In this document: positions 3,258 through 58,200 of the stretch, one piece after another
Position numbering within the stretch: position 1 is the stretch's first letter
Layout: every line of letters starts with the position of its first letter
Source: Perna viridis
Taxonomy: Eukaryota
Assembly: GCA_037379345.1 (NCBI GenBank)
Contig: CM074512.1
Span: 9,982,001-10,046,000 of the forward strand
Length of the DNA: 64,000 nt
Direction of reading: 5' to 3'
Notes under the pieces: model-generated
What the model saw: the letters and a program-made list of their open reading frames with translations, nothing else
What the model was told of the DNA's origin: nothing
Database searches by the model: none
Translations under genes and position numbers: made by a program

Positions 3258-3267
3258 GAAGACGACC

Positions 3268-6200
3268 TTGAGAGACATAAACCTGACCGATAAATCATCT
3301 GATCGTAACGGTTTTACAAATGACAATAGTTTGAATATCTTAACATTGAATGTTTGCGGATTAATAAGAAGAAGTCAGTACCCAGAATTTACTGAACTGA
3401 TTGATAAATATGATATTTTGTGTCTTGTTGAAACTAAAACAGACGATAAAACTGTTATTGATTTAGAAAATTTTAATGTTATTATGAAAAATAGATTTAT
3501 TTTCAGAAGGGTACGTTCTGGGGGTATTATTTTGGCTTTCAAGAAAACAATTGAAAAATACATTGAATATATTGAATCTGATAGTAAATATGTATTGTGG
3601 TTTAAAATTAAGAAGGGCATTTTGAAACTAAACGATGCAATTTTATGTGGAATTATATACATACCGCCTGAAAACTCGGCATACTGTGTTGGTAGTCCAT
3701 ACAATGAAGTTGAAAATGAATATTTACGTTTCAGCAACAATTACGAATATATTTGCCTTATGGGCGACTTCAACGCAAGGGTTGCAGAAGCTAACGACTA
3801 TAATGAAATTGTTTATGACGAGTTCTCGGGCATGTTAGAAAGTCAAACTAATGGTTCAGAAATTCTGAACGAATTGAATGTACCATTAGATAGAACTAAT
3901 TGTGACAAAATAAGGAATAATTTTGGTAACTCCCTACTAGAGTTCTGTAGAAACAACTCATTATTTATAGTTAACGGTAGAGCTGGAGATGATAAAAATG
4001 TTGGAAATTTTACTTGTAAAGGAACTAGTGTTGTAGATTTTGTTGTTTGCTCTCCAGTATTTTTTAGCATTATAAATGAGTTTTCAATTTTAGATTTGAG
4101 TAAGTTATTGTCTGATGTACATAATCCTATCCATCTTGTTTTGAAATGTATTAGTAAACCAAATGAAATGGAGCAAGAAAACGTATCACTGATCAAGAAA
4201 ACTAAGAGATGGGATAATGAAAAAGCTGGCGACTTTCAAAATTATTTAAATACTCAAAATATTGATATTATTTTGCAAGAAATAGAAAATGTCAACATGA
4301 ACAATATTGACAAAAATATTATAAATGGGCTCGTTCAGAAAGTTGGTGAAATTCTGACAGATGCTGCCGAAAATACCTTTGGAACATATATTCCTTCTAA
4401 TAAGCAAAATAAAAAGAAGAAAAATGATAAACCGTGGTTCAATGCTGATTGTAAATTAGCTCGAAGGCGTTATAAACGTTCAAAACGTCAATTTAGAAGT
4501 ATGAAAACAGAGGCTTTGAAGAATCAAACAAAGCGACTAGAAAAAGAATACAAATCCACTTTGGATATTAATATAAAATTACACAGGCAGCAGTTAAAAA
4601 GGAAATTAAATAATTTGAAAACTAAAAACCCAAAGGAGTATTGGAAAATTATAAATGGTTATAAAAAGAAAAAGTCACCAGATATTCAAATAGAAAGTTT
4701 ATTTGATTTTTTCAACACCCTTAACATGAATCCACACAATGATGATTTTGATCTACCCGAGGTAGATGTTGTAAATGAACAAATTAATCATACTATTTCT
4801 TATGAAGAAATAGAACAAGCTATAAAACGCTTGAAAAATGACAAATCGTCAGGTGACGATAATATTGTAAATGAATATTTGAAATATTCATTCTCTATCA
4901 TGCCTAATGTATATGTTAGATTATTTAATATCATTTTTGATAGTGGCATTGTTCCCGATGAGTGGCTTCTTGGTAATATTATACCAATCTATAAGAACAA
5001 AGGAGACCAATTCGATCCAAAGAATTTTAGGCCTATTACTATTATAAGCTGTTTTGGAAAATTGTTTACCTCTGTCTTAAACTATAGATTGAACAAATTT
5101 TCAGAAGAAGTGAACCTGATATGTGAAAATCAGGGTGGGTTTCGACCAGGATACTCAACGATAGATAATTTATTTGTTCTGAATTCCCTTATTGATCTGA
5201 TAAGACAATATAAGAGGAAGAGATTATTTTGTTTGTTTATTGATTTTGAAAAAGCTTTCGATAAAGTTCGGCGTCTTGGTCTCTGGAATAAAATGTTACC
5301 AAACAATATAAATGGTAAAATGTATAATATTATTTTCAACATGTATAGTAGTATTAAGTCGAGAATTTTATACAATGGTAGTATGTCTGAATACTTTGAA
5401 TGTAATATTGGTGTTAGACAGGGAGAAAATTTATCTCCTTTCTTATTTGCCTTATTTTTAAATGATTTAGAACAATTCTTCGTAGAGACTGATGTTAGGG
5501 GGTTGAACAGCCTATCTGATGAGATAGGTGATCAACTCAACATATTTATCAAACTATTTTACTTTTATATGCTGATGACACAGTGTTATTAGCAGAGACA
5601 AAAGAAGATTTACAGTTTCAAATTGATAAATTTTATGAATATTGCACTCAATGGAAACTGTATGTTAATACTAATAAAACAAAAGTAGTCATTTTTTCTT
5701 CAGGTCGCATACCTAGAAATACACATTTTTCATATAACGGTAATGCGATTGAAATTGTTAAAGAATTTTCATACCTCGGTCAATTATTTTCAAGATCAGG
5801 CAGTTTAACATCAGCGAAAAAGATGAATGTTAAAAAGGCTACCATAGCTATGTATGATGTTCTTAAAAAGGGTAGACTACATAACCTGTCAATACGAGAC
5901 CAATATGACTTATTTGACAAGATAGTAAAACCTATTCTTTTATATGGTTGCGAGATATGGGACCATACTAACTTAGACATTATTGAGAGGGTTCATTTGA
6001 AATTCTGTAAGCTATTGCTTAACTTAAAGAGGAGTACGCCAAATGTTATGATATATGGTGAGCTCGGTGCTTACCCTTTAGCTGTTCAAATTAAGTCTCG
6101 TATGATGGGATATTAGTCTAGACTCGTAAATGGCAAATCCAGTAAACTTTCAAATGTACTTTATAGATATATGTATGAACTATATATTCAAAACATATTT

Positions 6201-6764
6201 GAATCTCCATGGGTTAACATGATTAAAAACACTCTAGATAATTGTGGGTTTGGGAACATTTGGCACATTCAGTTTGCGGGAGGTTTTCATTCAGAGTGGT
6301 TTACAAAATCTATTAGTCTGCGATTAAAAGACCAGTTTCAACAAACATGGAGATCCGACGTAGAAAACTCGCATAAATGCTTTTGTTATAAATTGATTAA
6401 AGAAAAATTTGAATTCGAAAACTATTTAGATATTTTACACGAAAAGGATGCTATTACTCTTTGTAGATTCAGAGTAGGCAACCATAGACTACCAAGCGAA
6501 ACAGCAACTTGGCAAAACTTTGATAACTCAAGTTTATGTACCTTATGTAATAATGGAGAACATGGAGATGAGTTCCATGTCATTTTCCAATGTCTCCATT
6601 TTTCGGACACGAGGAAGCAATTTTTAAACAAAAGATATTTAGAGCGAGTGAATGTTCTGAAATTTAAAGATCTGTTTCAGACAAAAAACAAGCATGAATT
6701 ACGAAACCTATGTAAATTTGTTAAACTCATCGAAATTGATTTTAAAAATGTTTCTCAAGGTTAG
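3268..6764 (+). pseudogene. LINE ORF2 (AP endonuclease + reverse transcriptase + C-terminal CCHC finger) with one frameshift and one nonsense codon
   Basis: APE motifs LTLNVCGL, LVETK, MGDFNAR, SVVDF, SDVHNPI; RT motifs NFRPITI, QGGFRPG, FIDFEKAFD, GVRQGENLSP; YADD restored by adding one T to the run at 5557-5560; in-frame TAG at 6114-6116 (probably TGG); CTLC..DEFHVIFQC near the end. Joins ORFs 3268-5592, 5583-6116 and 6171-6764. Confidence 0.9.
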
Positions 6765-21900: not shown

Positions 21901-24900
21901 TAATTGTTTGTTATAATGGTCTTACCATCTGTATACTATTTGGGAAAAAAATGATCTTTAGTTTCAGAGTTATGGGACTTTTTCATATTTTTTGGGGCCC
22001 CATGCAGGTCCAGGTGTTGAAAGAATAGGCCTGCAGCAGGGCTAAGCTTGTCGTAAAAGGCGACTAAATAGTGCTCAGAAACCTAGCCGGGGGCTAGGTG
22101 CTCTGCCCACAGAGCAACTGGGATGTGTGCCCCAAGTGGTGGAATGGGGTACCCCTGGCATGTTACATGCTGGGGTTGTCAGGCTATAATACAGAAAACC
22201 TGACTGCAAACCATAGTAGTGCACCGTGTTGGGAAAGATGCCACGTTCCTTGCAGGTTAAAGAACCCTACTGTGGTATTCTCCAGGAGTAGGAACCTTTG
22301 CGCTTCGCCACAGGAGGCTAAATTGCCCGACCTTACCCATCCTTCCCTTTTTCTAGTGGCAATCAAAATTTATCGACCCTATTGTCCTTGTGTCCCATCC
22401 CTTTTTTTTTCATTTCATCATCATTTCATGTCCATTTTATCATCCATTTCATGTTCATGGTCTGAATATAGATGAAATATTGCTGCTCGGACATTAAACC
22501 CCAACCATCAATCAATCATATTTTTTGGGGACATTTTTTTCATACACTATAACTCCATCATGGGCAAGTTTTTTTCAGACATGTAGTACTGATCATACTA
22601 ATAAGTGGTATTGGTTTTCCAAAGTTTGTGATTACCTCAATATTCTTCTTTGTGAGGCCATGTTAGTTATTGCTAAGGCATCTTAGACAATTCAAACACA
22701 AAATAAGATTGAAATTAAGTCGATTTTTAGGATGAATAACAGACAACAACTATTGACAATAACTCACCCTATCTCAGTCAGTACCCTGGATCTTTAAAGA
22801 CATTTTGAGGACAAGCAATAGACAACAACTGATGACAATAACTCACTCCGACTCAGTCATGATTATGTATGAAATATTTAAGAAAGGAAAAGACAGAAGT
22901 GGTAGATTGTGGATTAAGGAACAAAAAAAAACTAGTGCAGTGGAAAAGTATGCATTGAGTTAAAAGAAAGAAAACGAAAAAACAATTGCAGTAGGGTGAA
23001 AACACAGAACAAAGAAACAAGTGTGGAAGAATATAACAGAGCACTTTAATAGTGTGAATTGAGCAAAAGAAAGAAAAAGATAGGGAATTGTAAAAATGTG
23101 GGTAGGCAAAAGAAAGGGAGAAGACAGAATGGTAGAATGTAGATTAAGGAAATGGAAAAGGAAAAAGCAAAGCAGGAAAGAGTGTTGAGGTGAAAGAAAT
23201 AACAGACAAGCACTGTAACAGTGAAATGAAGGAAAGAAAATAAAAGACAGGGGTGATAAAGTGTGGATTTAGGAAAAAAGAAAAGAAAATAATAGTGTGA
23301 ACGATTGTTGAATGAGGAAAAGGGGAAAGAAATAGAGAACTATATCTATATGAGTGGATTGAGAGAAAGAAAAGAAAAGAAGGCAGTAATAAAGTGTAGA
23401 TTGAGAAAAAAGAAAGGCAAAAATTATTTAGATAGAGCAAAGACAAAGAGGAAAAGAGTGTGAACTGAAGAAAAGGGAAGGAGAAAGGGACCTATGATAG
23501 AACATGCATTGAGGAAAGGGATAAAAAGTGAAGACCAGTGAAAGAATGTAGATTGAGAAGAAAGAAAGAGACAGAGTATTGTAAGAGTGTGGCTTGGGGG
23601 GGAAAGAGAAAAAAAAGGAAGAGAGTAAAAGATTGTGGATAGTGGGAAAGGAAATGAGAGGATGGGGCAATACAATTCAGAATTGTCAACTTTCCTTTCA
23701 TCTGTGGCAACATCCCTTCAGCACCTGGAGTGTTCATATCACAACTCATACGTTATGCCAGAGCTTGCCGAAACTACACAGACTTTTTGTATCACCCTAG
23801 AACTCTAACAAATAGGCTTCTGGAACAGGGTTATGTTGCTACAAGATTGAAGTCATTACTACAGAAGTTCTATGGTCGTCATCATGAACTTGTGGATCGT
23901 TATAGTGTATCCATCTGCACCATGAAAACTGATTTATTCAACGGGTCATAGTTTTCCTTTCCTCGTTTGTCTACCCCGGACTTGACCTTTTATGAGCAAC
24001 TCAGCGGGTGTTTCTAGAAAAGCAGAGGATGCTTACCCTACCAGTGCACCTGGTCCATGCTCCCAGTTTTTAGTGGAGTCTGAGTTGCTCATTTGCTTTT
24101 GTTACTTTGTATGTATTATTTTAGTTACTGTATGTTCTTTGTTGTGTATGTCTGTTTTCCATGTCAGGTCTTTGTCCCTGGATTACATTCTTTTGATTAC
24201 CACTATAACCTTGGTTCCCTTGATTACTCTTTTACATAGTTCTTTATGTGAAAATTATTTAAATTCTTTATTAAACATGGGTTCATTATGCAAATCTGTT
24301 TGTCCTGGCCTTTTTCTAGCTGAATGATTTTATATTTGGTTTATGGCATTGACATGGTGTATTGACTGACTATACTTATTTCTCTGATCATACTTAGAGT
24401 GTGTTGTAAAACAAACAAAAAATGTCACATTTTTTAGCTGAGAAAGGAAGAGGAAAAGACACAACATAGCATGGATCTAGAGAAATGAAGGAAACAACAA
24501 AAAGAGCAATGTTTCAATCTAAAAGTCGAATCAAAATCCTTTATAATTGAATAAAAATTTGGGAAAGATTTCACTAGTCAGAATAAATTTAATTAATGTG
24601 GGACCACAGTCACATATTGTTTATATATTAAAAATCTTCTTTTTGTCAGGAATTTGTTAGTTAATGCCAAAGATAGAAGGATAGTGATATGTGAATCCAT
24701 GTTATGTCCATCTCAATTTAGAGAAACATTAGCTAAGGTTCTATTTATTCACTTTGAGGTATGTAAACCTTTAATGTTAGGTAAACAATGAATTTAAATT
24801 TGCCAGGCTTTATAAAATTCTATAAAGTTTGTACACAGGAGTGTTGTACTGATCAGTCTAAAATTTTGTCACACCTTAATTTTTACTTGAAAAAAATATT

Positions 24901-30900: not shown

Positions 30901-33457
30901 TCAAGGTGAATGTGGTTCAATCAAAGTATTGATTCAAATTCTAAAAAAAATCATCATTGGAGGAGCTATGGTACTGTTATGAAATGCATAAAATCAGAAC
31001 TTCCTTAGTGAAAGAAATTTGGCCAACCACAAAAACTTGTATGAAATTAAAGTATTTCAGATTGATCTTAATTTTTGTAGTGAGATGTTGTTTTGTTACA
31101 AACATTAAAAGAGCCAAACAGATTCATGATGTCATGATAAAAGGTGACGACAAAAGCAAGGTATTTTTCATTAATGTGGTTATGTATAAGTTGAGAAAGA
31201 AAATTAATAAATGACTGGGGAAACATTATTAGTAAATATACAAGAAACTGAAACCCTGTTATCCCCACCACCAATCCTTAATGCAAAGATTTTAGCAGAT
31301 TAACAAATAACAAAAATCTGTTAGAATGCTCAGAATCAGAATCAGAATGCAGTTATCAAAAAGTTTACCTCTAGAAATTTGGTAATGGTTATTTGTTTGA
31401 GTAAGTAATAGTGCTTGGATATTGCTTTTTCTCACAATCCAGTTCTATTTTTCAGAGTACTTTTGAAACAATTAAATATGATTAGTTAATTGCTGAGTTC
31501 ATTCTTATCATAACAGTTGTTATTGTCTTAGCCTAACACTCTGTATTAATTATACACAGATTTTCATTTTTTTCTGATGAACATTTATAGAAGTACAATG
31601 ATTTTAAGTAGTTACAATATAATCCTATTTATCATTTTAGTTACCAACTCCTCCACCCAGTGTTAAGTATCCACTTGATGGAGGAAAAGTCTTACATATA
31701 TCTGGTGAAATCAGGTTAGATTTAATACTTAGGTCTGTTATTTTATGTAATAAGAAGTTGGTTTGTTACAAGTTACATAATATAGAAACTACACTATAGA
31801 AACCATGAAAACATTAAGAGAAGAAAACTAATGCTCTTCATCAAAAATATTTTTGTGAGGTTATTTCAGTCATTTAAGATAAATTTTTTAATGACCCAAG
31901 TTTTATGAATTCCTATGACTGAAGCTCTTTGGTTAAACATATTACAACAAAACTCCTTTTATTAGTGATGTTTTTGTAGGGAACATAGTTGTGAAGTATT
32001 GTTTGAACAAGATAATGAAGAGGTTTCAGTATCAACTCTTCTCCTAGATTCCATACTCAAGGTAAATACAACTATTTAAGGAAAACTAGAAAACAAAAAA
32101 AGAAAGGGAGCTTCTCACAAGAAAACAAACATTGAACCAAAAAAAATATTAAAACCCTTGAAGCATATAATGACATGAGATGGACAGATTGACTGGGTGT
32201 AACATAGTATGTCCTTCAAACAACATGGCTTTTATTTTATGCATGTTTATTCCATCTGCTAATACAGTACCTCCTAAAGTAGGATTTAATAATATTCTAT
32301 GTAGTGCAGAAGCTTGGTTTATGTCCCTTTGTATGCCCCCAGCATGTATCGTGGAAATCTTACATTCCATTAAGTTAAACATACACTGTATGATTTCCCT
32401 TTTTTAAAATAGGACTTGGACCTCTTTTGTATTGAGTTTTCTTGGGTCATATGGAGTTGATAAGGGGTCAATTTGGAATTTGATTATAGCAAAATATAAC
32501 AGCCTTTCCTTAAATAATTGTTTATTTTTTAAAGTGCCCCATTGACATAAGAAAGAGTTTGGCTGAGAACATTGTGATTATTGGTGGTACTTCAATGTTG
32601 GCTGGATTTCATCACAGACTTAGATCTGAGCTGTATGACCTACTGCAAAAACCAAGATATGAAAAACATTTAGCCATTAAAGAGTTTAGATTCCATCAGC
32701 TTCCTGCTAAACAAAATTATGCTGCATGGCTGGGAGGTAGGTTTTCTCTTAAATCACTTTATTTTTCTCATTGTCATATTCACTATTTCAGTCTTTATGA
32801 TGGCATATTATTTGGAAACAAATGTGTGTGAAATAATTACAATAGAAAGTTGTGTTTTGCCTGCATTATATTTAATATGTACCCCTATTCTACTTGAATA
32901 AAGTTAACTAGTCACATGGGAATAAATATGTCATTTACAATGTTTCAAACTTAAAAGATATCCAAACACTCCAGAAGAAAAGACATCACACAAAACAACT
33001 AAGAATCACATTGTCATGTAATCAATATCTCCAATAGCCAAAAACATCAAACTTCCATCCAACTGTAAAAAAAGTATATCTGAAAACACCTGGATTAACT
33101 TTTTTTATAAATGTATTACCTTGATTACCTTCCTAGAAAGGTTCAATCTGTACTCTACTTCTTACAAATAAGTGCAGACTTTTTATGTTTAGAGCTCATT
33201 GTTGCACTTGAAAAAAATGGTTATGTTTTCATTGTACATACATTAAAAATACAGGTACCAATTATTCAGGTAGATTAAACTTGATTAATTGTTGTTATCT
33301 TCATGAATGTCTTCATAGGTTTTTAAGCACTTTTTCCATTTCAGGGGCTATGGTAGGAGCTTTAGAGACTTTGCCTAGTAAATCTGTATCTAGAGATCTG
33401 TATATAATCAATGGGCATCTAACAGACTGGTGTTCTATTTCTCATGAAAAACAATAA
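15831..33457 (+). CDS. ACTR10: Actin-related protein 10 (dynactin Arp10/Arp11), complete 13-exon CDS, 391 aa
   Basis: join(15831-15907,20422-20494,21263-21342,24650-24758,26745-26852,27807-27874,29304-29377,30046-30081,31081-31160,31641-31714,31980-32061,32535-32736,33345-33457) = 1176 nt, all GT-AG, phases consistent. Peptides [97 protein letters not shown] match ACTR10. Confidence 0.95.
16126..16251. mobile_element. Hairpin MITE, AcademH-like (TAG...CTA ends, 9-bp TSD)
   Basis: Arms of ~55-62 bp around an 8-nt loop; flanks ATTCTATAC (16117-16125) and ATTCGATAC (16252-16260). Confidence 0.7.
17485..17837. mobile_element. Two adjacent MITEs (17485-17701 and 17707-17837)
   Basis: CAGGGATTGAAGTT...AAATTTGATCACTG, and CAGGGACTTGAGGTCATGAGATAGATC...GATCTATCTCGTGCCTCCAAGTCCCTG inverted ends. 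Confidence 0.55.
18702..18794. repeat. Tandem repeat, 31 bp x3
   Basis: AATGATATCAGCAGTGTATATGTTAAAGAAT repeated. Confidence 0.85.
20422..20494 (+). CDS. ACTR10: ACTR10 exon 2
   Basis: [24 protein letters not shown]; CAG/GT boundaries. Confidence 0.9.
21263..21342 (+). CDS. ACTR10: ACTR10 exon 3
   Basis: [27 protein letters not shown]; CAGAAG tandem acceptor; donor GTAAGG. Confidence 0.88.
21998..22515 (+). mobile_element. Non-autonomous retroelement (SINE-like) with perfect 15-bp TSD
   Basis: TCATATTTTTTGGGG at 21983-21997 and 22516-22530; GC-rich head with GCTTGTCGTAAAAGGCGACTAA; central GTTAAAGAACCC..GAGTAGG; tail GAAATATTGCT..TTAAACCCCAA..(TCAA)n. Confidence 0.85.
22870..23672. repeat. 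Purine-rich degenerate repeat tract
   Basis: ~800 bp strongly A/G-biased on +, with recurring GTGTRGATTGAG followed by A/G runs. Confidence 0.75.
23678..24232 (+). mobile_element. 5'-truncated Penelope-like retroelement (RT thumb + 3' UTR)
   Basis: [52 protein letters not shown]; stop at 23951. Confidence 0.8.
24650..24758 (+). CDS. ACTR10: ACTR10 exon 4
   Basis: [36 protein letters not shown]. Confidence 0.92.
25450..25950. repeat. Dispersed repeat with internal ~150-bp units (related copy at 28060-28575)
   Basis: Shared ACAATAACTTGAGT..TGGATCTCT..TTGATTTT..GGTTAT..AGGAATTAGG..GTATCAAG blocks. Confidence 0.5.
26139..26637 (+). mobile_element. Non-autonomous Helentron-like (HINE-type) element
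   Basis: Starts TTAGCTCATCTGG..GTGAGCTA then (GTC)-rich; ends GTGAGAGATTCAGGCTCCTGGGAGC; same family as 47212-49019 and 51255-52144 in the opposite orientation. Confidence 0.65.
26745..26852 (+). CDS. ACTR10: ACTR10 exon 5
   Basis: [36 protein letters not shown]; followed by GTATCCTT donor. Confidence 0.92.
26853..27806 (+). other. U12-type (minor spliceosome) GT-AG intron 5 of ACTR10
   Basis: 5' site GTATCCTTCT; branch-like TTTTCCTGAAT at 27787-27797 close to the AG; no polypyrimidine tract. Confidence 0.85.
27807..27874 (+). CDS. ACTR10: ACTR10 exon 6
   Basis: [23 protein letters not shown]. Confidence 0.92.
28060..28575. repeat. Dispersed repeat related to 25450-25950
   Basis: Same unit motifs and terminal GACCTCTG..TATCAAG block. 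Confidence 0.5.
29304..29377 (+). CDS. ACTR10: ACTR10 exon 7
   Basis: [24 protein letters not shown]; phases fit exons 6 and 8. Confidence 0.85.
29425..29755. repeat. 39-bp minisatellite derived from the exon 7 end and splice donor
   Basis: Unit AAGTGACAGGAGAAACCAGTATCCCCATGTATGTATCCAT vs exon end GGGCAGGAGAAACCAGTATCCTCAG|GTATGTATTCA. Confidence 0.85.
30046..30081 (+). CDS. ACTR10: ACTR10 exon 8 (36 nt)
   Basis: [12 protein letters not shown]. Confidence 0.88.
30285..30502. repeat. Tandem repeat, 46 bp x ~4.7
   Basis: ACTTTTACAGAACATGTAGAGTCTAATAGCGAATGATATCATGTCA, nearly identical copies. Confidence 0.9.
31081..31160 (+). CDS. ACTR10: ACTR10 exon 9
   Basis: [27 protein letters not shown]. 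Confidence 0.9.
31641..31714 (+). CDS. ACTR10: ACTR10 exon 10
   Basis: [25 protein letters not shown]. Confidence 0.92.
31980..32061 (+). CDS. ACTR10: ACTR10 exon 11
   Basis: [27 protein letters not shown]. Confidence 0.92.
32535..32736 (+). CDS. ACTR10: ACTR10 exon 12
   Basis: [29 protein letters not shown]...AAWLG. Confidence 0.93.
33345..33457 (+). CDS. ACTR10: ACTR10 exon 13 (coding part)
   Basis: [37 protein letters not shown]. Confidence 0.9.
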
Positions 33458-34915: not shown

Positions 34916-36204
34916 CAAATTTTAGTAAGTTAATAATAAGTTGGTAAGTGATCCAAATAGATCTCCCTATCGGTGATCATGATAGGTCGATGCTGATTTT
35001 GAAGGATTTAATTCTGCTATTGAAGAAGTAGACTAGAATTCTTTTTGGAGTTCTTTGATTAGTGTTGATGAAATGAGTACTAAATTTACTGAGAAATATA
35101 CTCAACTGGCTAGAGGACATATTACTGATATTCCTAATTCAAACAAGATATTGACTGGGAACAGATTCAACCTTTGATATTGAAACAATATCTTGTAGTG
35201 AAATTAAGTGTCGAAAACGAGGAAGCACGTATTGCTGCTGGCCTTCCTGGATTTGCAAGTACCGAATCGCTTTATTTCCAAAGTGGATGGGAAACCCTTC
35301 AAAACGGAAGGAAAAGAAGAAAACTTAACTTTGTTATATAAAATCCACACTCAAAAGGCCCGAAATAATTAATCGATTGTCTGCAAAATGTTATTCAAAT
35401 AAACACTAACCATAACTGGAATAATCAAAACGATTATAGAATACCATTAACAAGACTTCAGTTATTCTCTAATTCATTATTTCCATCAACGATTAATTTC
35501 TGGATTGGTCTGGATAACAGTATCAGAAATTCCACATCTCCCAATTCTTTCAAAAATAAAATCCGAATAACCTCACCAAAACCACCAAAATTTTAGGATT
35601 CTGGCGATCGGTACTATAATGATATACATACAGGACTTGGACATCGATCGAACAATTTTGTCCTTTTTCGTGTTGGATTAAATAGTGTCCTAAATGTGAA
35701 TGGGTAGAAGATGCAATTCATTTTTTTCTGGAGTGTCCTTTCTATTACCGAGCTCGCTTAATTGTTTGCAATACATTTATCTATGACGGCGAAATGAATA
35801 TTGAACATGTCCTTTTTGGCAATGATTTACTTATTCCTGATAAAAAAACACTGCTTAACGCGGTATAACACTTTGTCCAGCAAACTAAATGTGTTTAGAT
35901 TCAACAGTGTTTTTTTTTACTCTTTCAAACACAGTGTTATCATTTCTTTGCGAGTGATTTTCAGTATAAAATACTGAACATTATGTTAGATTTGACTGAT
36001 GTGTATACAAGATCTGACTGATGTGTATATAAGAACTGACTGATGTGTATATATCTAATTTTATATGTATATATTTTTGTTGATGCATGTTTGTTGTATG
36101 TATGATATATTTGTTATGTTGATCATGGAGAAGGAATCATTACAAATTGGTATAACTTTAGTCTGACCCTTTGCTAATATTGCAATAAAATATGTTTAAA
36201 CTAA
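34916..36204 (+). mobile_element. Decayed, internally deleted CR1-group LINE
   Basis: Remnant peptides VENEEARIAAGLPGFASTESLYFQSGWETL, EDAIHFFLECP; tail CAATAAAATATGTTTAAACTAA at ~36183-36204. Confidence 0.65.
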
Positions 36205-37262
36205 TGAAGATATAGCCCGGATGCAATGTTTTATTGATATAGACATTATGATAATCTAGTTTGAAAGATGTATTTAACAAACACAAGACTGAATTAACAA
36301 AAAGAAAAGACAGATGAAAGATATTCCATGAAAAAAAAAAAAACAAACAAACAAACAGAAATTAACCCTTCAGTTTCAGTGATCATTTATAGTGCTTTCA
36401 GCTCTCATCTTGAGTATAGGTTATTGAAAATGCGAATCTGTCTTTTTTGCATCAAGAAAAAAAATACCTTGTCTGGGAATTCAAATTTCAAGTCGATAAA
36501 TCTTTTAATTAATAGGGATGCTAGGATATTTTTATTCTAGAATCTTCCGCGGTAATTTTGGTTGTGATTGTTAATTGAACACTTTTGTAACTAGACAATA
36601 CATCTCGTTCTAGTAATTTATTTCACTGATGAGATGTAGAGCACTTCTGAAAATTTCATTTCAGTTTGTTGAAATAAAACTTATTTATAGCTCCCATAGA
36701 TATATAATTTGTAAATCCTAGAAAACTCTTATGAGCATTGGTGAATATAACCATAAAATCAGTAGCCACGAGTTAATATATAAATAAGTGTGCCTTTTCA
36801 TAACTACATGTAACTGCAAAATAGTGTGTATACTGGACGTAAATGGAGAAGGTGAATAGAGGCAAAAGTGAAACAAAATAATATAAAACCGAACTACCTC
36901 TTTCTATTAATCTCTTCGCCGTTTCAGTTTCTAGAGTATTTGAGAAATTATTTTCGTAAGAAAAACAACCAAGGAGGAAATCCAATGCGGCAGGGTACTG
37001 AAAGGTTTCGGATGTTTACCATTACATGTATTACATCTATGTGTACTACATACTAATACACCCACCAAATTTACACTAAACTAGAGCGGATCTGTTTTGT
37101 AATTGACATAGTGCACGATATGACTATTTCACTAGAGCAGACGTTCATCGACAAAAATATGATTCCAGTGAGTTGAACAACGGATTCATAATCCGGTATG
37201 AAGTATGGTAATACAAAACAAAACTTCCGTCGTGAGTTTATGAATTTAATTGCTACCATTAA

Positions 37263-37634
37263 TCATAATGATTCATCTAGATTTTCTTTCAGCGTCATCA
37301 CGTTGCACTGAATCAACTCTCCTGTAATGTTATAACTGTAAGACACAGAGAAAGCATCATTTCCCTGGTGCCAAGTTCTCCTTGGTTTAATGGGAACAAG
37401 CTTGGGACGCTTATATGGAAAATTACTTGAATGCACAAACCTCGTCTCCTTCCCTCCTGCTTTGTTAAACGTGATTTTTTTATTTGATTGGTTTGTTCTG
37501 GAATTTTCATTGACCAGATTACTGCAAGAATGTCTATTACAAGTATTTTTTTCTAAAGTATCTGCTGCAGTTATTGGTGTAGATTCTTTTTCTTCCTCCA
37601 CGACAACCTTGTTGGTGCTTGCTGATGAACCCAT
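37263..37634 (-). CDS. Uncharacterised 123-aa protein with predicted N-myristoylation motif (MGSSAST)
   Basis: Good Kozak context GCGATGG; hydrophilic composition; KRPKLVPIK motif; head-to-head with the 312-aa ORF. No family recognised. Confidence 0.55.
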   Translation of the reverse strand: MGSSASTNKVVVEEEKESTPITAADTLEKNTCNRHSCSNLVNENSRTNQSNKKITFNKAGGKETRFVHSSNFPYKRPKLVPIKPRRTWHQGNDAFSVSYSYNITGELIQCNVMTLKENLDESL

Positions 37635-37705
37635 CGCTTCCCGCCGTATCCAAGATAACTTTGTGACGTCATTGACGTACTATAACAACGCAATGTTTGG
37701 GAAAA
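37635..37705. promoter_or_regulatory. Putative compact bidirectional promoter with CRE sites
   Basis: TGACGTCA at 37664-37671 and TGACGTAC at 37673-37680, near the middle of a 71-bp CpG-rich spacer between two ATGs. Confidence 0.55.
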
Positions 37706-38644
37706 ATGGGCGTAAATGTAAGTAAAAAGGAAGAAAAACAAACCAAAAGAGCAAACGAAATAGATAATCTCATCAAAGCAGGTGAAAGTTGCAATTCGTC
37801 ATCAAGTAGTTCACCTGATAGTTCAATATTTAGTAGCAGCAGTTCAAACAGTGAGAATCTCGAAGAGGTTACACAGTGTGAATCAAAGAGCAATGAACAG
37901 ACATCAGAAACAGGTCAGTTGGAAGTACAAGATGTACCTTCAGAGGAATCTGAACTACCGTCATTGAGTAACCAGGTCCGTAAGCTACCTAACACAGACA
38001 AAACCGAAAAATCAAAATCTGATATATCAAGGCCAATTAGTGATGCTGAAAAACGACTTCGATTGTATGAAAATGAGATTAAAGCAACAAACTCAGAACC
38101 TTCACAGCGACAATCCACATCGTCGGCCAACGGTGGTGAAAACAGAAATCCTGACTATCCTTCGGTACTTAGAAAGACTAGGCCTCATATTTTCCTAAAA
38201 AATGATGATATTCTTAAGGTACGTAGAACTGGAGTGTTTGCTAACGACCCATTCCAAAGTCTTAGTCCGGTGTCGGCAAAAAAACCAGGACAAAGTGATA
38301 TTTTGTACCAACTTGGCCAAGAAGGAATAGTCAAACCAATGACAACCGAAGAAAGGACTATAGGAGAACTTCGTTCAGCAGGGATACTAAATCAAACAAG
38401 TGATGATAGCTTATCAAAGAAAATATACCCACGATTAGCGCCATTGAAGGTAGAAAGTGTCTGGGCTAAGGTCCCTGAAGCTAAGTTAGCCGCACCCTGG
38501 GAAAGAAAGGACTGTCTTCGGGCAGATAGTAATGAGGCATTACCGGGATATGTTCCATCTGCAAGTGAACGCGAAGGACAAGCGCTAACTAATAACGAAT
38601 CTACTAAGTTAAAGCTGAAGATGATGAATATGGATTTATTATAA
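37706..38644 (+). CDS. Uncharacterised intronless 312-aa protein, predicted N-myristoylated (MGVNVSK), with STMND1-like motifs
   Basis: 939-nt ORF in AT-rich DNA, AAAATGG start, Ser/Glu/Lys-rich disordered N-half; QSDILYQLGQEGIV and TIGELRSAGIL resemble the DILEELxxxGII motif recalled from STMND1; PRLAPLK. Confidence 0.78.
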   Translation: MGVNVSKKEEKQTKRANEIDNLIKAGESCNSSSSSSPDSSIFSSSSSNSENLEEVTQCESKSNEQTSETGQLEVQDVPSEESELPSLSNQVRKLPNTDKTEKSKSDISRPISDAEKRLRLYENEIKATNSEPSQRQSTSSANGGENRNPDYPSVLRKTRPHIFLKNDDILKVRRTGVFANDPFQSLSPVSAKKPGQSDILYQLGQEGIVKPMTTEERTIGELRSAGILNQTSDDSLSKKIYPRLAPLKVESVWAKVPEAKLAAPWERKDCLRADSNEALPGYVPSASEREGQALTNNESTKLKLKMMNMDLL

Positions 38645-39609
38645 AATAATAGACATTTTCAATAGTTTTATATAATGCATGTCAAGACAACACTAAAAAA
38701 AGGATGCAAATGATATTTCTAGATATAATGGGAATTCAAATTGCTTCTAAACGATTCGAGAATACATGTTGTTATTTATATTTCTGTTTTCAATTTTTGT
38801 TAGTTTTTTTTTTCTTTTTGCGTTCAGCTCACCAACCGTCGGAAGTTTCAGTCCCAGGTGGTAGCTCTCTTGAACTAAAATCGGATTCATTTGTAAAAAA
38901 AAAAGACCTTTTAACTATAATATAGAATTCGAAAGTTTCAGAGAGGAAATTTGTCCAAAAAATTGAAGTAACGTGTAGCAGTGGTTAAAATTTCAGTCAG
39001 GTTTTACAGTGACCTATAATCTTGAAAATCAGTGAGGTTCTAAATATTAGTATTGATCCTGAAGTAATAATGATTTTACTAATTTTGATACCGCTGCCGT
39101 GATCTTCTTTTTTAACCTACTTTGGAATGAATTAGTATGTACGAGGTTTTTTAAGTTGGTCAAAATCTATTGTTAGATGTTAATTGTAGAATGTCATAAA
39201 TCTTGATGCTTGTTGATCTAAAATTGAAATGTGATCCTGATCCTATGACCTCCTGAAAAGTACATTTGTTTGACCAGTAAAATAAAAGCAATGGCTACTA
39301 TATGGTTTTCTCGTGCAATGTGGTAAGAGGGACTTCAAGGGAACTAGGGTTCAAACGGTAATAAAAAACCATAATCATAGGTTAAGGACTACAGACAAAG
39401 AAAATATGAAATAGTCAATTATACTGACTTGAGTCACTGAAACTTACACATTTTAATAATATGGTGCATACCATTCGAGACAGAACTAGATGATACCTGA
39501 ATAATAAAAATCCAATAATTTTAACTTTAGTTCAAAGGTCATGGTCAAGAATGTATGCGACATCGTTTAATGGTAATACACCCATGTGCCGAATTTGGTA
39601 TGCCTTTAA

Positions 39610-40145
39610 AATGTAACGTCTGGGATAGCCAAAGAGGAAAAATATGTAACGGGGGAACAAATCGGTTCCCATGGTGCAGATGGACACATCATAACGATCC
39701 ATAAAACTATTGTGAATACTTCGGTCTTGAAGCAACAAAGCCTAATTGTAAGAAGTCTAGCACGGTACAAAAAGTCTGGGTAGTTCCAGGCAAGCTGTAG
39801 CATAACGAGACAGCGATATAGGCAGGTGCGGAAGGGATATTTCCACAGATGAAAGATGAAAGGAAAGTTGACGATATGGAACAGTTCATCGCGTTTGTCG
39901 TATAGTTTCCTTTCCATCGATTTTCAAGAGTAGGTCAAGATAAGAAGCTAATTTTATAGTGTCATAACAAAAGTTGTTTTCTTTCCATTCTTTAGTATAG
40001 ATGAATCTCTGTTTCTTCTTCCATAAGATCAGCCTCATAAGAGTTCAGGCATACGTCAGTAAGTAGCGGGGTACAATTTTCCCACTGGAATGCCGACCGT
40101 CAGTTGAACACTCGACTTATGTATCGATAAAAAATCCAGCATTTA
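39610..40145 (-). mobile_element. Decayed Penelope-like RT fragment
   Basis: VGIPVG.NC.PLL, SYEAD, SYLDL, KLYDKRD, IVNFPF, GNIPSAPAY with frameshifts; same family as 23678-24232. Confidence 0.75.
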
Positions 40146-40429
40146 TATCTAGTATCTTACTTTGGTCATGGTATACAAAGTAAGCAGAATCTCTACGCTA
40201 TGTAGATATGTATTTGTGTATAAATGTTTCATTTTTTCCTTACAGTAACAACGATGAATGTGCATTATATTTTTGAGCACGGGTAATAGTAGTGTAATGA
40301 GATGAAAAATCATAGACCTTGTTGCTATAATAAACAAGAATTGAGAGTTCTCAAAAGCTCTTTCGAGTTTTTAGGATCTACATGGACGAATCGTAGTAAC
40401 CATAAAAGTAACAATCACAAAAATTGGTA

Positions 40430-40790
40430 CTAAGATAAGGTTGTAAGTGGCTCCCCCAGACACTAAGATTAAGGATGTAGGCATGCTGTGGGCTCTCCCC
40501 CCAGGTAGTAAGGTAAGGTTGTAGGTGTGTCTGCCAGGCTCCCCCCCCCAACCAGACACTAAGATTTAGGATGTAGGCGTGCCTGCCGGGCTCCCCCAGG
40601 TACTAAGATTAGACAAAATGTATACAGTATCTGCTAGGCTTCCCCCAGATACAATATACTTTTGTTTTCTTTCATTTTTGAGTTCACATGCATTTTCATT
40701 TTTTACACCTTTCATGTATCTGCTGGGCTCTCCCCAGATACTAATTTCTGAAATAAGTTCGTTTTCTACAAGTAGCCCCCAGACTGCCAA
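40430..40790. repeat. Degenerate ~45-bp minisatellite
   Basis: Recurring GGCTCCCCCAGA(C/T)ACTAAGATT..GTAGG. Confidence 0.75.
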
Positions 40791-42137
40791 ATTATGTTTT
40801 TTTGTTTTGTATTATTGAATATTGTGTTTATGTAAATATTTTGTACTGATGTTTTACTTAGTTTTAATGTAGTTATTGTAATAGATTAATTAACTTCATG
40901 TGTTTGCGTTTGCAAAGATGTTAAATGTTTTGACTGCATACAAACAATACTATGAAGTCAGAACTGTCTGAAATTTTATTAGTTTTTAAGAAAATGAATG
41001 TGGAGCTGCCTCCTCCTTTTTAATCATCTATGCCAATTTTTTTTAATGAAAGTCTTGTTTTGGGTGATTTTCTGGTAACATTCACTTCTCGCTCTAAAAT
41101 ACCAAATGAAAGTGATAAGTAAGTAAAAATTTTCAGAAATTTGAATTCTTATACTTCGTACGGAAGTAAAACAAACATTCTAATCTGAATAAATGAAACC
41201 TCAATTTTTTAAAATATTTCCTCCTTCTACTTGTCAAATACTTAACATAGCTAAATTAACAGATATTACTACAAGCAAGTTAAAAGAACCATCAGAAGTG
41301 CAATGAACTACTTACTAAAAAAGAAAAAGTACATTTCATGTTCTTGGAAGAAAATTTTAAAAACTATATTTTGGACAGAATTTCAATTGTGCATCACTCC
41401 CTAGCCACTAATGTGAATTCACTTAGGCTCTAATACTAACTTCACTAAGTTAAATATGTTATGGACCTTAAGTTTAACATGAATTAGTAAAATTTTAAAT
41501 CAAAAGATGAGACAATTGTAGCTAGTAGAGAATTTGTACTCGTTACATAGATAGATGTGATATTTGTAAAGGTAAAGAAGTGTAGAATGTAAGTTATAAA
41601 TTATCTGATAGGGCACCATTTTGCTCTTTCTACTGTACAGCTGAATAGTAGTCTACAACAAAAATCCTTGGTTGAGGCTACACCAAGACTCTTACAGATG
41701 AAACTTCTATTTGAGAAAGAAAAACTCTCTTCATAGTCCAACTATTTCTGAAAATGGATCAAACCATATTATATGGCATACTTACAGGAAGAATGTGTTA
41801 AAATTTCAAGCTGCTGTGATGAGTAGTTCCCGAGAAAATTGACAAAAAAATTTTAAGATGGACCAGGATAATACAGTATACTCCCCTCTCTTTCCAAGAG
41901 AAGGTATAAAAAATAGTGATCTTAACCTATGAAATACATATATGCATGTTAGTTTGACTTTTTTTTTAGAAATAAAGAAGTTGATTATGTACATACCAAA
42001 TTGTAACAATAATGTTTCTTGTAGAAGGTCAACATTGATACTGTAGTCATGGACTCGCAATAATAGAATTTATGTTGATGACCTTCAGGTAAAAAAAAAA
42101 CAAACCAAAAAAACACTACATTTTGAAGTAAAAACAA

Positions 42138-55297: not shown

Positions 55298-58200
55298 CCC
55301 TTTGCCTGCGCTAAGGACACATATGTCCTTCGTCGGCTGAATGCAGTAAGGATATATGTCCTTTGTCAGCTGAATGCAGTAAGGACATACATGTCAATCA
55401 GGAAAGAAAATTTCTTTACAAAAATAAATTACAATTAAGACCAATAAAAAGACGAAAAATTACAGTTTTGTATTTTTAACAAGTTGCTAAGTAATTTTCA
55501 TAGCAAATCTTGATGTCATGAACATGATGATGTCATATGTGAAAAGACGTAATGAAGTGTTTGACTTCTTAATCAAAATGGACGAAAAATTTGACGATAA
55601 TGGATCAGATATCAGCCTATACGAGGAGAGTGATGAAGAAACTGACAAAGAAAATTATCAAGATTTAAACCCTGAACATTGCAGGATGCTGACAGTTTTG
55701 AATTTCCACATGATATTGAACCTTTTGCGGACCAGTTAATCCTCCCCTGTTAGAACTTCTGAACCACTTGAATATTTCCTTTGGTTCTTTTCTAATGACA
55801 ATACTTTGACATTCTTGTAAGAAACAAATCCGTATGCCAATAAAATTCTGAACACTAACAACTTCAAACCAAATTCAAGATTAAATAAATGGGAAGATGT
55901 TAATCATGAAGAAATGTCTGCTTTTCTTGGACTTTGGTTGTCCATGGGCATTATCCATAAACCCATTTTGGCATCTTATTGGTGTGAAAGTCAGCAAATC
56001 TGGTTATACAATACACCGACATTTCCTAAGGTAATGTGGCGAGTTCAATATTTTTGCAATGTTTACAAGCAAACAATAATGCAGGTGCTTTACCCAGGGG
56101 AAATCCTAACCATGATCCTGCTCACAAGGTTTGCAGAATTTTTTATCTGACAAATAATGTTTTTAAGGAGAAGTATGCAGCACGATATTTAACGGTTGAC
56201 AAGAGTATGGTTGGACATAAAGATCAAGATTACACAGTAAAGTATATGCCAGCTAAAAAGGCCCATCGGTGGGGTGCTGAATTGTGGGTGCTTGCAGTCT
56301 GACACAGGCTACAGTTGAAGCCTAGATCTGTACACGGGTATGTATATATATATCAACAATGTCTGATTTTGTATGAACAATTATACTATAATGATATTTA
56401 TAAAAGAGTTCAATTTATTGTGGGAGTAAGAAAGTAATTTGATAAGGATACTGACTGTGTATTTATCAAAATGCAAACCTAAGCCCTTTAAATTAAAATA
56501 AATCAAAAATATATTTGTATGACAAACAATCCATTCATTACTTTGCTGTATAGTTTCCTACATACAACTTATAAAACCATTCGACCAAGAAAAAAAGATT
56601 ACCCAAATTGTGACACCACTTGGTCTAAAATTCCCAGATATTTTTTCCTGGAATTTCGATTGAATCCAAGCGTATAAACATTCAAATTGACTCCTCATGT
56701 ATAAATTATGTTCACCATATATATGTACGTCTCTTGCTGTTGAGAATTTCTTTTTCTTATCCCTCCCCCAAAGAACTTTTTATCATTGTATGCACTTGAA
56801 TGAAGTAATCATGGTTTATTTTAGGAAAGCAAAACATTGTGCAGAGAGAAACGGTGTACATAGATTTGGATATGATGTCGTTACCAAGTTGGTCGAACCT
56901 TTCTATGGAAAATATTATCATGTAGTGGTTGACAATGGTTTTACGAGCCCAGTTTTAAGCCATGATCTGTTTGGTAACCAAACCTACTTGACGGGAACAG
57001 TGAGGAACACAAGATGGAACATGCCAAGAAGCTTCAGAAACATGAAACTACAGAAAGGTGAACGAATTGTGTGACAGTCCAGTGAAATAATGGCTCTAAG
57101 TACGGAGATAAGATGGTGTGCCTTTTGCCTACTATATAACCTCCAAGGTAATCCTAGTGCACTTATTTTTTGTCTTAAACAAATAATTCAGTCACAAAAT
57201 ATAGTCTTCCTTATTATACATTGTACATAAGTGTAATTTCAAAATAACAAATATCATACTTCTTTCAGTTTGGAAAATTATACAATTAAGAGGCGTTGAA
57301 CACGATGTTCCAAAAGCAGTTGTCATGTATAACAAATTAATGGGAGGTTTTAATCTGGCAGACAAGATGCTGACAACTTATGACCCAAATGTGAAGTCTG
57401 TAAAATTATGGAAGAAACTTACGATGAACGTACTTCTTAGAATTACCGTTAAGTTTACCGAGATTTTTTTAGTGGGAAAACATATTGTTTTGGCTGCGCT
57501 GGTCTGTCTGTCCGTCTGCCAGTCACAACTTAGTATGCGCAATTCCTTGGAATTTCATGAAACTTTGTAGGTAGTTTGGACGATAAAGATGTAGATATTA
57601 CCTCCTATTTTACAAAAAGTCATCATATACCGGTAGAACTTCAAATTAATATTTAGAGCTTTTATATCAGGACTAATTTACTATCAGTTAATATCAGCTA
57701 AAGGAATATATGTATGTACATCATTTGTATTTCAAAATGAATATGACATTTCAGTAAATAACTACATTGTATAACTACAAAATTGAGGGCTTGTGAGCAA
57801 AATGTCAAGGCTGGACTTTACAAGTCAACTATACCAGGGGCTAATTGGAGATTTAAACATGCACTCGTCATTGTCTTTTTATGACTCAGACCGTCAATTT
57901 TATACATCATAATTGTGTCTGTTATAAAAAATCAGCATCCAGATCATTATTTAGTCCTGGCTATAACTTCTTTAAATAATTTGCATATAGCTCAAAACAG
58001 TAAATTGTTTACCAAACAAATATCTACGAGGATCTCTAAACCATGGCAAAATATTTGAATTATCTCTCACGATACAGCGCTCAGAACTAAAGGTACATTA
58101 AAATAACATTGGAGCACATGTACAATATATCTAGAGGCACTGAACATAATTCCATAACAGTTCTTGGTATACTTATGAGACTGGAATGAAAACTTAACCA

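What the first reader, a model, noticed from the sequence alone, without database searches (positions are those of the whole stretch)
37263..38644. Head-to-head pair of intronless, putatively myristoylated proteins sharing a 71-bp CRE-containing spacer
Seen: two ATGs in good Kozak context 71 bp apart (37634 on -, 37706 on +); both proteins begin MGxxxS (MGSSAST, MGVNVSK), both are hydrophilic, and both carry a basic LxP[IL]K motif (RPKLVPIK, PRLAPLK); TGACGTCA and TGACGTAC lie near the middle of the spacer. Established: MGxxxS is the N-myristoyltransferase consensus and TGACGTCA binds CREB/CREM/ATF. Inference: a compact, co-regulated two-gene membrane-anchored module, possibly cAMP/CREM-driven in germ or ciliated cells and possibly derived from an old inverted duplication. 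Such compactness is out of character for this intron-rich region, and no TE termini were found around it. This is the best candidate for an undescribed system here.
Basis: partly seen in the sequence, partly recalled or inferred. Interest (0 to 1): 0.8.

Follow-up and report, generated by a model that had tools for sequence, protein, structure and literature searches.

The report
Conserved divergent pair of myristoylation-motif genes
Two small intron-free genes sit back-to-back on a 71-base shared control region carrying a conserved cAMP-response element; the pairing is also found in a scallop, so it is a real, old, bivalve-restricted gene pair whose function is unknown.

Summary
A 123-aa ORF (37263-37634, minus) and a 312-aa ORF (37706-38644, plus) start 71 bp apart. 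The window's only TGACGTCA (37664-37671) and a TGACGTAC (37673-37680) lie between them.

- **Real genes.** Both are single-copy and open in a related species (dN/dS 0.26 and 0.23 at dS about 1.1). Both are covered by unspliced contigs in two runs that behave like RNA-seq, with the spacer uncovered.
- **Old arrangement.** In the scallop Mizuhopecten yessoensis, the long gene's orthologue is an annotated hypothetical protein. It also lies head-to-head with an intronless gene that starts MG and shares the short protein's core motif. That spacer holds the only TGACGTCA in 13 kb, and the upstream neighbour is the same.
- **Protein character.** All 13 family members fit the N-myristoylation pattern. 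Both proteins have no Pfam match and are predicted to be mostly disordered.

Three parts of the reading are not supported or not shown:
- The two proteins show no significant similarity to each other, so an inverted duplication is not supported.
- One lineage kept the long gene while the short one decayed.
- Germ-cell or ciliary expression and physical interaction remain untested.

Verdict: a genuine, undescribed but conceptually ordinary bidirectional-promoter gene pair.

The parts
37263..37634 (-). Short gene: single-exon CDS, 123 aa, starts MGSSAST. It has a conserved core (KETRFVHSSNFPYKRPKLVP) and a predicted C-terminal beta-hairpin at residues 95-113.
   Evidence: The ORF is. A 49%-identical orthologue, P0007, was found. 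dN/dS is 0.26, and 0.14 in the C-terminal half. Only this frame stays open in both species. The scallop head-to-head partner matches at BLASTP E 3e-5 and 1e-6. RNA-like contigs cover 37218-37402, 37386-37604 and 37426-37611. The AF2 model has mean pLDDT 54.5.
37706..38644 (+). Long gene: single-exon CDS, 312 aa, starts MGVNVSK. The N-terminal half is disordered and Ser-rich. The C-terminal half holds the conserved motifs: NDDIL.VRR, DIL.QLG.EGIV, GELR..GIL, RLAPL, APWE and a K.KMM..DLL end.
   Evidence: The ORF is. Homologues P0002-P0005, P0010, P0011 and P0013 were found and aligned as A1 and A2. dN/dS is 0.23. One 1044-nt RNA-like contig, 37701-38744, is fully colinear with the genome. The AF2 model has mean pLDDT 49.6 and only short helices.
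37635..37705 (.). 71-bp spacer between the two start codons; inferred core bidirectional promoter.
   Evidence: It is 77% identical (49 of 64 ungapped columns) to the 64-bp spacer of the related species, against about 40% identity at synonymous sites. It is not covered by the RNA-like contigs of either run.
37664..37671 (.). Palindromic cAMP-response element TGACGTCA.
   Evidence: This is the only copy in the 64-kb window. The related species has TGACGTCG at the same position. The scallop spacer carries the only TGACGTCA in its 13-kb locus.
37673..37680 (.). Second CRE-like element TGACGTAC, starting 9 bp after the first.
   Evidence: It is identical in the related species. TGACGTAA or TGACGTAG lies 25 nt upstream of the long gene's ATG in the L007/L008 lineage, and TGACGTTA lies in the scallop spacer.
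37638..37645 (.). Conserved TTCCCGCC block next to the short gene's start codon. It is E2F-like by consensus, which is a lead only.
   Evidence: Seven consecutive identical bases with the related species, which reads TTTCCCGC. It was not seen in the scallop spacer.

Best explanation
This is a conserved divergent gene pair: two unrelated, intronless, lineage-restricted protein-coding genes transcribed in opposite directions from one very short shared promoter.

Shown:
- Both ORFs are under purifying selection.
- Both are covered by unspliced contigs in runs that behave like RNA-seq, with the spacer left uncovered.
- The head-to-head layout, the upstream neighbour gene and a TGACGTCA element in the spacer are shared with a scallop.

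Inferred:
- The two start sites flank the tandem CRE-like elements.
- A CREB/ATF-class bZIP factor bound there drives or gates both genes, so that they are switched on together in particular tissues or stages. A pKID-type gene exists in this genome.
- After removal of Met1, both products are N-myristoylated on Gly2 by the genome's N-myristoyltransferase. They would then act as largely disordered, peripherally membrane-associated proteins working through short conserved linear motifs.

My odds:

| Claim | Probability |
|---|---|
| Both are real protein-coding genes | about 0.9 |
| Shared bidirectional promoter | about 0.8 |
| CRE is functional | about 0.6 |
| Both proteins are myristoylated | about 0.7 |
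| The two proteins act together | about 0.3 |
| Germ-cell or ciliary role | about 0.25 |
For: **Genes**
- ORFs and spacer geometry.
- Single copy in the genome.
- Orthologues found.
- dN/dS 0.26 (short) and 0.23 (long) at dS 1.05-1.25.
- Only the coding frame of the short gene stays open in both species.

**Transcription**
- Run X10 has one 1044-nt contig, 37701-38744, at depth 19.5 and fully colinear with the genome. It also has a contig at 37386-37604.
- Run X12 covers 37218-37611 and 37705-38690 in pieces.
- Both runs leave 37612-37700 and the flank 35988-37169 uncovered.
- No joints or loose ends occur at the gene starts.
- Two raw RNA runs, X23 and X24, have almost no reads here.
- The share of words held varies from 0.00 to 0.80 among runs of the same studies.

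**Arrangement**
- The related species keeps the layout with a 64-bp spacer.
- Scallop locus L017 has two single-exon genes head-to-head. The partner starts MGASVTK and carries KESIFVETSEFPYARAKLV.
- The last exon of the upstream actin-domain gene is conserved at window 33341-33454.

**CRE**
-.

**Machinery in this genome**
- A pKID gene and an NMT gene are present.

**Myristoylation pattern**
- Met1, Gly2 and Ser6 are invariant in alignment A2 while neighbouring residues change.
- All 13 members fit the PROSITE-type pattern.

**Disorder**
-.
Against: - The two informative runs are labelled only 'RNA?'. They are unstranded assembled contigs, so neither the strand nor exact 5' ends are shown.
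- The long-gene contigs begin 1-5 nt before the ATG. The true start site is therefore inferred to lie further upstream.
- Tissue of expression is unknown.
- The short gene is not universally retained. In the L007/L008 lineage it has three in-frame stops, and L007 has also lost the ATG. No partner was called within 2-3 kb upstream of P0010 or P0014. L016 shows an unrelated ORF upstream.
- The orthologues P0003 and P0007 read MMG, so myristoylation there needs initiation at the second ATG.
- The window's short protein is acidic after the MG start. A second membrane signal is therefore lacking.
- No binding, lipidation or interaction data exist.
Confidence: 0.7

Rival explanations
1. The genes merely share a promoter and have no functional coupling. 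The two genes are independent, and the compact CRE promoter fires in both directions as many promoters do. The shared MG start is coincidental, because myristoylation motifs are common.
For: The two proteins have no detectable homology to each other. The short gene decayed in one lineage while the long gene stayed intact. No adjacent partner was called for P0010 or P0014. No interaction evidence exists (tool unavailable).
Against: The layout is conserved between the window species, a related species and a scallop, together with the upstream neighbour. Both partners keep the MGxxx[ST] start in every intact copy. The two genes appear together or are absent together in the four runs laid.
Confidence: 0.3
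2. The pair arose by an old inverted duplication, and the two proteins are diverged paralogues.
For: Both start MG followed by small residues. The distant long-family members P0010 (MGSSSSA) and P0011 (MGAAAST) resemble the short protein's MGSSAST. Both proteins carry an R.L.P[IL] motif.
Against: Profile-profile comparison aligns only 12 N-terminal residues, with probability 0.7%. BLASTP gives E 0.064 for the motif region only. The conserved cores (FPY.R.KLV against DIL.QLG.EGIV and APWE) do not correspond.
Confidence: 0.08
3. The short ORF is not a gene. On this reading, the coverage over it is a promoter-upstream antisense transcript or a 5' extension of the long gene.
For: The contigs are unstranded. 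A 97-codon stop-free antisense run overlaps it in the window.
Against: dN/dS is 0.26 at dS 1.25, with the frame intact. The antisense frame is not open in the related species. The scallop orthologue is at the same position with the MG start and core motif. The spacer is uncovered in both runs, which argues for two separate transcripts.
Confidence: 0.04
4. The pair is cargo or a relic of a mobile element or virus.
For: Both genes are intronless and compact in an intron-rich, TE-rich region. A LINE lies at 2235-6764 and a piggyBac-like fragment at about 56.7 kb.
Against: Both genes are single-copy in 723 Mb. Neither has a TE or viral domain. Microsynteny with the scallop is conserved.
Confidence: 0.02

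Closest known systems
Mizuhopecten yessoensis hypothetical protein KP79_PYT10769 (OWF35725.1) and its unnamed head-to-head neighbour on NEDP02076711.1
   Same: These are the orthologous pair. Both genes are single-exon and divergent, and both products start MGxxx[ST]. The model's annotated start for KP79_PYT10769 lies 36 codons upstream of the conserved MGSAAS. TGACGTCA lies in the spacer, and the same actin-domain gene lies upstream.
   Different: The spacer is 341 bp between the MG codons, against 71 bp here. The partner is 302 aa with a long C-terminal extension and a strongly basic N-terminus. Identity to the window proteins is only about 29-36% over parts of them. Both scallop genes are annotated only as hypothetical.
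CRE-containing bidirectional promoters of mammals, e.g. murine Catsper2 (PMC9714369)
   Same: A short promoter is active in both directions and contains a CRE. In Catsper2 the CRE is bound by CREM-tau and is needed for activity in a testis-specific gene.
   Different: In Catsper2, binding and activity were measured, and the promoter is a CpG island with CTCF sites driving spliced genes. Here nothing has been measured, the spacer is 71 bp, both genes are intronless, and the tissue is unknown.
N-myristoylated, intrinsically disordered membrane-associated proteins (Src-type N-termini, MARCKS, BASP1; established knowledge)
   Same: They share the Met-Gly start with Ser/Thr at position 6. The long protein and the scallop partner have Lys just after it. 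The chains are largely disordered with short conserved motifs.
   Different: There is no sequence homology. Lipidation is untested. The window's short protein lacks a basic or Cys second signal.
TEX33/CIMIP4 (PF15400) and SPATA6 (PF14909), vertebrate sperm proteins
   Same: These were the nearest named clusters by language-model features for the two scallop orthologues (scores 0.79 and 0.75).
   Different: Both scores are below the tool's own noise level: shuffled proteins reach 0.8 a third of the time. Pfam scans at E up to 10 did not hit either family. This is a lead, not a relationship.

Membership tests
N-myristoyltransferase substrates | Met1-Gly2 start with G-{EDRKHPFYW}-x-x-[STAGCN]-{P} (PROSITE PS00008 type), Ser/Thr preferred at position 6 | tested here: met
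   All 13 members (10 long-family, 3 short-family) fit. Met1, Gly2 and Ser6 are invariant in A2 although residues 3-5 differ between lineages.
N-myristoyltransferase substrates | The enzyme is present in the organism | tested here: met
   NMT_C (PF02799) exons lie at G000 C11:26.35 Mb, above the curated cut-off.
N-myristoyltransferase substrates | Covalent myristate on Gly2 | not testable with these tools
   This needs metabolic labelling or mass spectrometry. The MMG starts of P0003 and P0007 are a caveat.
Bidirectional-promoter (head-to-head) gene pair | Two genes on opposite strands with their 5' ends less than 1 kb apart | tested here: met
   The start codons are 71 bp apart. In orthologous loci the gap is 64 bp, 94 bp and 341 bp.
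Bidirectional-promoter (head-to-head) gene pair | Both genes are transcribed divergently from start sites within the shared region | tested here: inconclusive
   Both gene bodies are covered and the spacer is not, in two RNA-like runs, and no upstream exons are joined. However, the contigs are unstranded and the 5' ends are not mapped.
Bidirectional-promoter (head-to-head) gene pair | Co-expression | tested here: inconclusive
   Both genes are present in X10 and X12 and both are near zero in X23 and X24. That is four runs only, with tissues unknown.
cAMP-response element (CREB/CREM/ATF site) | Palindromic TGACGTCA, or a TGACG half-site, in a promoter | tested here: met
   TGACGTCA lies at 37664-37671 and TGACGTAC at 37673-37680. 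The octamer is unique in the window.
cAMP-response element (CREB/CREM/ATF site) | Conservation in orthologous promoters | tested here: met
   The related species has TGACGTCG plus TGACGTAC at the same offsets. The L007/L008 lineage has TGACGTAA or TGACGTAG. The scallop has TGACGTCA, unique in 13 kb, plus TGACGTTA.
cAMP-response element (CREB/CREM/ATF site) | Bound by a CREB-family factor and needed for activity | not testable with these tools
   A pKID-domain gene exists in the genome. Binding needs ChIP or EMSA and reporter mutation.
Paralogous pair from inverted duplication | Significant sequence similarity between the two products | tested here: not met
   hhalign gives probability 0.7% over 12 columns. 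The best BLASTP E-value is 0.064.
TEX33/CIMIP4 (PF15400) or SPATA6 (PF14909) | Match to the Pfam model | tested here: not met
   There is no hit at E up to 10 for the window proteins or five homologues. The Atlas scores of 0.75-0.79 are at noise level.

The most novel reading that the evidence does not exclude
The two proteins could form a conserved, bivalve-specific, myristoyl-anchored signalling pair. It would be switched on by cAMP/CREB-type input in one cell type, for example spermatids or ciliated cells. The short protein would act as a dispensable regulator of the long one. That would make the locus a self-contained lineage-specific module with its own promoter logic, preserved over deep bivalve divergence.
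Probability: 0.12. Interest if true: 0.55.

Novelty: new member of a known kind. Interest (0 to 1): 0.36.

Why it matters
The result adds two uncharacterised, bivalve-restricted protein families. Their only named member is a scallop 'hypothetical protein'. Both families have testable properties: a lipid-anchor motif that is invariant across the family, and a tiny promoter whose key element is conserved.

A 71-bp bidirectional promoter with two CRE-like sites would be a convenient minimal system for studying bZIP-driven divergent transcription in molluscs, where few promoters have been dissected. The locus also gives a natural experiment. The long gene persists in a lineage where the short partner has decayed, which bears on whether head-to-head conservation reflects shared function or only a shared promoter. 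Beyond that it is ordinary biology rather than a new kind of system.

Tried and rejected
- **Pfam.** Scans of both window proteins and five homologues at E up to 10 gave nothing meaningful.
- **PDB.** A profile search of PDB sequences gave only E > 1 noise.
- **ESM Atlas.** It could not take the window proteins because the machine was busy. The scallop orthologues gave only sub-noise leads, TEX33 at 0.79 and SPATA6 at 0.75, and structure matches with TM below 0.3.
- **AlphaFold2.** Both models have low confidence (pLDDT 49.6 and 54.5), so no fold search was run.
- **Paralogy.** Paralogy of the two proteins was tested and rejected.
- **TE origin.** Rejected on copy number and domains.
- **Source organisms.** A search of papers for the run and assembly accessions, to name the source organisms, found nothing. 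A paper search for bidirectional promoter plus myristoylated plus intronless also found nothing.
- **Earlier scan notes.** They held nothing on this locus.
- **DNA for the P0010/P0014 lineage.** It could not be fetched because the file was too large, so the absence of a partner there rests on gene calls only.
- **Cluster look-up.** My look-up of the scallop partner used a range that cut off its start codon and therefore found nothing. That result says nothing about the partner's annotation.
- **Motif ideas.** I considered RPEL, WH2, RVxF and DXXLL readings by eye. None is conserved across the family or supported by Pfam, so I dropped them.

Full report
**1. What is in the sequence**

- A 123-codon ORF runs on the minus strand from the ATG at 37634 to the stop at 37263 and starts MGSSAST.
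- A 312-codon ORF runs on the plus strand from the ATG at 37706 to 38644 and starts MGVNVSK.
- The 71 bases between the two start codons (37635-37705) contain TGACGTCA at 37664-37671 and TGACGTAC at 37673-37680.
- Both ATGs have a purine at -3 and G at +4.
- TGACGTCA occurs once in the whole 64-kb window, and that one copy is in the spacer. About 0.41 copies are expected in the window.
- GC rises to 0.39-0.41 over the two ORFs, against about 0.30 around them.

**2. Both ORFs are genes**

- Each is single-copy in the 723-Mb assembly. Neither has a Pfam match, TE-related or otherwise.
- Both have homologues in public assemblies.
- Three DNA contigs of the same species (L001-L003) reproduce the locus at 99.9% identity.
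- Two contigs of a related species (L004, L005) carry orthologues at 61% and 49% protein identity.
- Between these two species, synonymous sites are close to saturation (dS 1.05-1.25), yet both frames are intact. dN/dS is 0.23 for the long gene and 0.26 for the short one, falling to 0.13-0.14 in their C-terminal halves.
- In the short gene only the proposed coding frame stays open in both species. The 97-codon antisense run seen in the window is not preserved.

**3. Transcription**

I laid four runs on 35200-41100.
- Two runs recorded only as 'RNA?' (X10, X12) behave like RNA-seq. Depth is zero over 35988-37169 and is confined to the two gene bodies and to repeats further right.
- In X10 a single 1044-nt contig spans 37701-38744 at depth 19.5. 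It aligns end to end with the genome, so the whole long CDS is unspliced and no upstream exon is attached. A second contig covers 37386-37604.
- In X12, contigs cover 37218-37402 and 37426-37611 (short gene) and 37705-38690 (long gene, in pieces).
- Both runs leave 37612-37700 uncovered. That is what two separate divergent transcripts with poorly covered 5' ends would give.
- No joints or loose ends occur at either gene start.
- Two true raw-read RNA runs (X23, X24) have almost nothing here. Within single studies the share of the locus's words held ranges from 0.00 to 0.80. Expression therefore depends strongly on the sample.

Limits of this evidence:
- The informative contigs are unstranded.
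- The exact start sites are not mapped.
- The tissues are unknown to me.

**4. The arrangement is old**

- The related species keeps the head-to-head layout with a 64-bp spacer. That spacer is 77% identical to the window's, against about 40% identity at synonymous sites. It contains uninterrupted identical runs over TTTGTGACGTC and TGACGTAC.
- A profile search of 1.84 billion representatives and a word search with the enlarged alignment found only a handful of further relatives of the long protein.
- One of these relatives is named: hypothetical protein KP79_PYT10769 of the scallop Mizuhopecten yessoensis.
- At the scallop locus (L017) this gene is a single exon. Immediately upstream, on the opposite strand, lies another single-exon gene of 302 aa.
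- That partner starts MGASVTK and carries KESIFVETSEFPYARAKLV, which matches the core KETRFVHSSNFPYKRPKLV of the window's short protein (BLASTP E 3e-5; 1e-6 with P0007).
- The scallop spacer is 341 bp between the two MG codons. It holds the only TGACGTCA of the 13-kb locus, plus a TGACGTTA.
- The gene upstream of the pair is also shared. The last exon of the scallop's 1388-aa actin-domain protein matches window 33341-33454 on the plus strand at 64% identity.
- The pair, its orientation, its neighbour and its CRE therefore predate the split between the window's lineage and scallops. I cannot name the organism.

**5. What the proteins look like**

- Neither family matches Pfam, even at E up to 10, or any PDB sequence.
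- AlphaFold2 with the available shallow alignments predicts mostly disorder. The long protein has mean pLDDT 49.6 with four short helices (113-128, 166-172, 199-205, 214-224). The short protein has pLDDT 54.5 with one C-terminal beta-hairpin at 95-113.
- The Atlas's own models of the scallop orthologues are equally poor.
- Conservation in the long family is concentrated in the first seven residues and the C-terminal half. The conserved motifs are NDDIL.VRR, DIL.QLG.EGIV, GELR..GIL, RLAPL, APWE and K.KMM..DLL at the end.
- Met1, Gly2 and Ser6 are invariant even where residues 3-5 change between lineages (MGVNVSK, MGSSSSA, MGAAAST, MGSAASI).
- All 13 sequences of both families fit the PROSITE-type N-myristoylation pattern. 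The genome encodes an N-myristoyltransferase.
- That selection keeps Gly2 and Ser/Thr6 is what the sequences show. That myristate is attached is inference.
- The long protein and the scallop partner have lysines just after the motif, a plausible second membrane signal by established knowledge of Src- or MARCKS-type anchors. The window's short protein is acidic there, so stable membrane anchoring is less likely for it.

**6. What is not supported**

- The two proteins are not detectably related. hhalign aligns only the 12 N-terminal residues at probability 0.7%. BLASTP gives E 0.064 for the LxP[IL]K region. The inverted-duplication idea therefore has no support.
- The pairing is not obligatory. 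In the lineage of contigs L007-L009 the long gene is intact (P0004; P0005 has an internal deletion). The short gene's region is still recognisable (MGSIPSK..., SSNFLL, KKETRFVY...HPRLV) but carries three in-frame stops, and L007 has also lost the ATG.
- Next to the more distant homologues P0010 and P0014, no partner ORF was called within 2-3 kb. The DNA itself could not be fetched.
- Germ-cell or ciliary specificity could not be tested. The only hints are language-model neighbours TEX33/CIMIP4 (0.79) and SPATA6 (0.75) for the scallop proteins. These scores are below the tool's stated noise level and are contradicted by the Pfam scans.

**7. Most likely mechanism**

This is a compact bidirectional promoter whose conserved core is a tandem pair of CRE-like sites starting 9 bp apart. 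I infer the following.
- A CREB/ATF-class bZIP factor binds there. A pKID-domain gene is present in the genome.
- Transcription starts on either side within the 71 bp, giving very short 5' leaders.
- The two intronless mRNAs are produced together in particular tissues or stages.
- Both products lose Met1 and are myristoylated. They then act as disordered, peripherally membrane-associated proteins through their conserved short motifs.

The murine Catsper2 promoter (PMC9714369) is a worked example of a CRE-dependent promoter active in both directions in a testis gene. It is an analogy for how such a promoter can work, not evidence about this one.

The main rival reading is that the two genes share only the promoter and not a function. 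The decay of the short gene in one lineage gives that reading real weight (about 0.3).

**8. Novelty and score**

- The two protein families are undescribed. Their only named member is a 'hypothetical protein', and nothing relevant was found in the literature searches.
- The kind of thing is familiar: a divergent gene pair on a bidirectional promoter, and myristoylation-motif disordered proteins.
- I class it as a new member of a known kind, of moderate interest mainly to molluscan genomics and promoter biology.

- The reads call used 5901 letters.
- No N runs were involved.
- No spliced model had to be joined, and no step needed referral.

Noticed in passing
window 33341-33454 (+): This is the last coding exon of an actin-domain gene, ending ...[11 protein letters not shown] then a stop. 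It is orthologous to the end of a 1388-aa scallop protein with Actin plus faint LRR hits that lies upstream of the scallop pair. The microsynteny is therefore conserved.
   Followed up: partly
window 2235-6764 (+): A LINE-type retrotransposon: a coiled-coil ORF1-like ORF, then endonuclease (Exo_endo_phos) plus reverse transcriptase (RVT_1) and zf-RVT pieces split over several ORFs.
   Followed up: no
window 56697-57074 (+): A fragment of a piggyBac-type transposase (DDE_Tnp_1_7, E 4.5e-12).
   Followed up: no
window 39731-39927 and 40519-40715: These short stretches have the highest depth in all four runs, with many loose ends, variant letters and odd joints. That is the behaviour of an expressed dispersed repeat, probably SINE-like. 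L001's end also matches window 23895-23992 at 74%.
   Followed up: no
window 37695-37697: An out-of-frame upstream ATG lies 11 nt before the long gene's start, giving the reading MFGKNGRKCK then a stop. It lies upstream of the first bases of the RNA-like contigs (37701 and 37705) and is deleted in the related species' spacer.
   Followed up: partly
window 37638-37645: TTCCCGCC lies next to the short gene's ATG and reads TTTCCCGC in the related species. By consensus this is an E2F-type site. It was not seen in the scallop spacer.
   Followed up: partly
P0012 (144 aa; source contig not fetched): This called ORF joins, on one strand, a remnant of the short gene (KKETRFVYINTMASSYTHPRLV) to a piece of the long gene's N-terminal region (KITKVKVVATGVDVNRTETHKSIDSG), which are on opposite strands in L008. 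It suggests a rearranged or duplicated copy in the L007/L008 lineage.
   Followed up: no
L017 6001-6108: The scallop gene model for KP79_PYT10769 starts 36 codons upstream of the conserved MGSAAS. Comparison with P0011 (MGAAAST) suggests the annotated start is too far upstream.
   Followed up: partly
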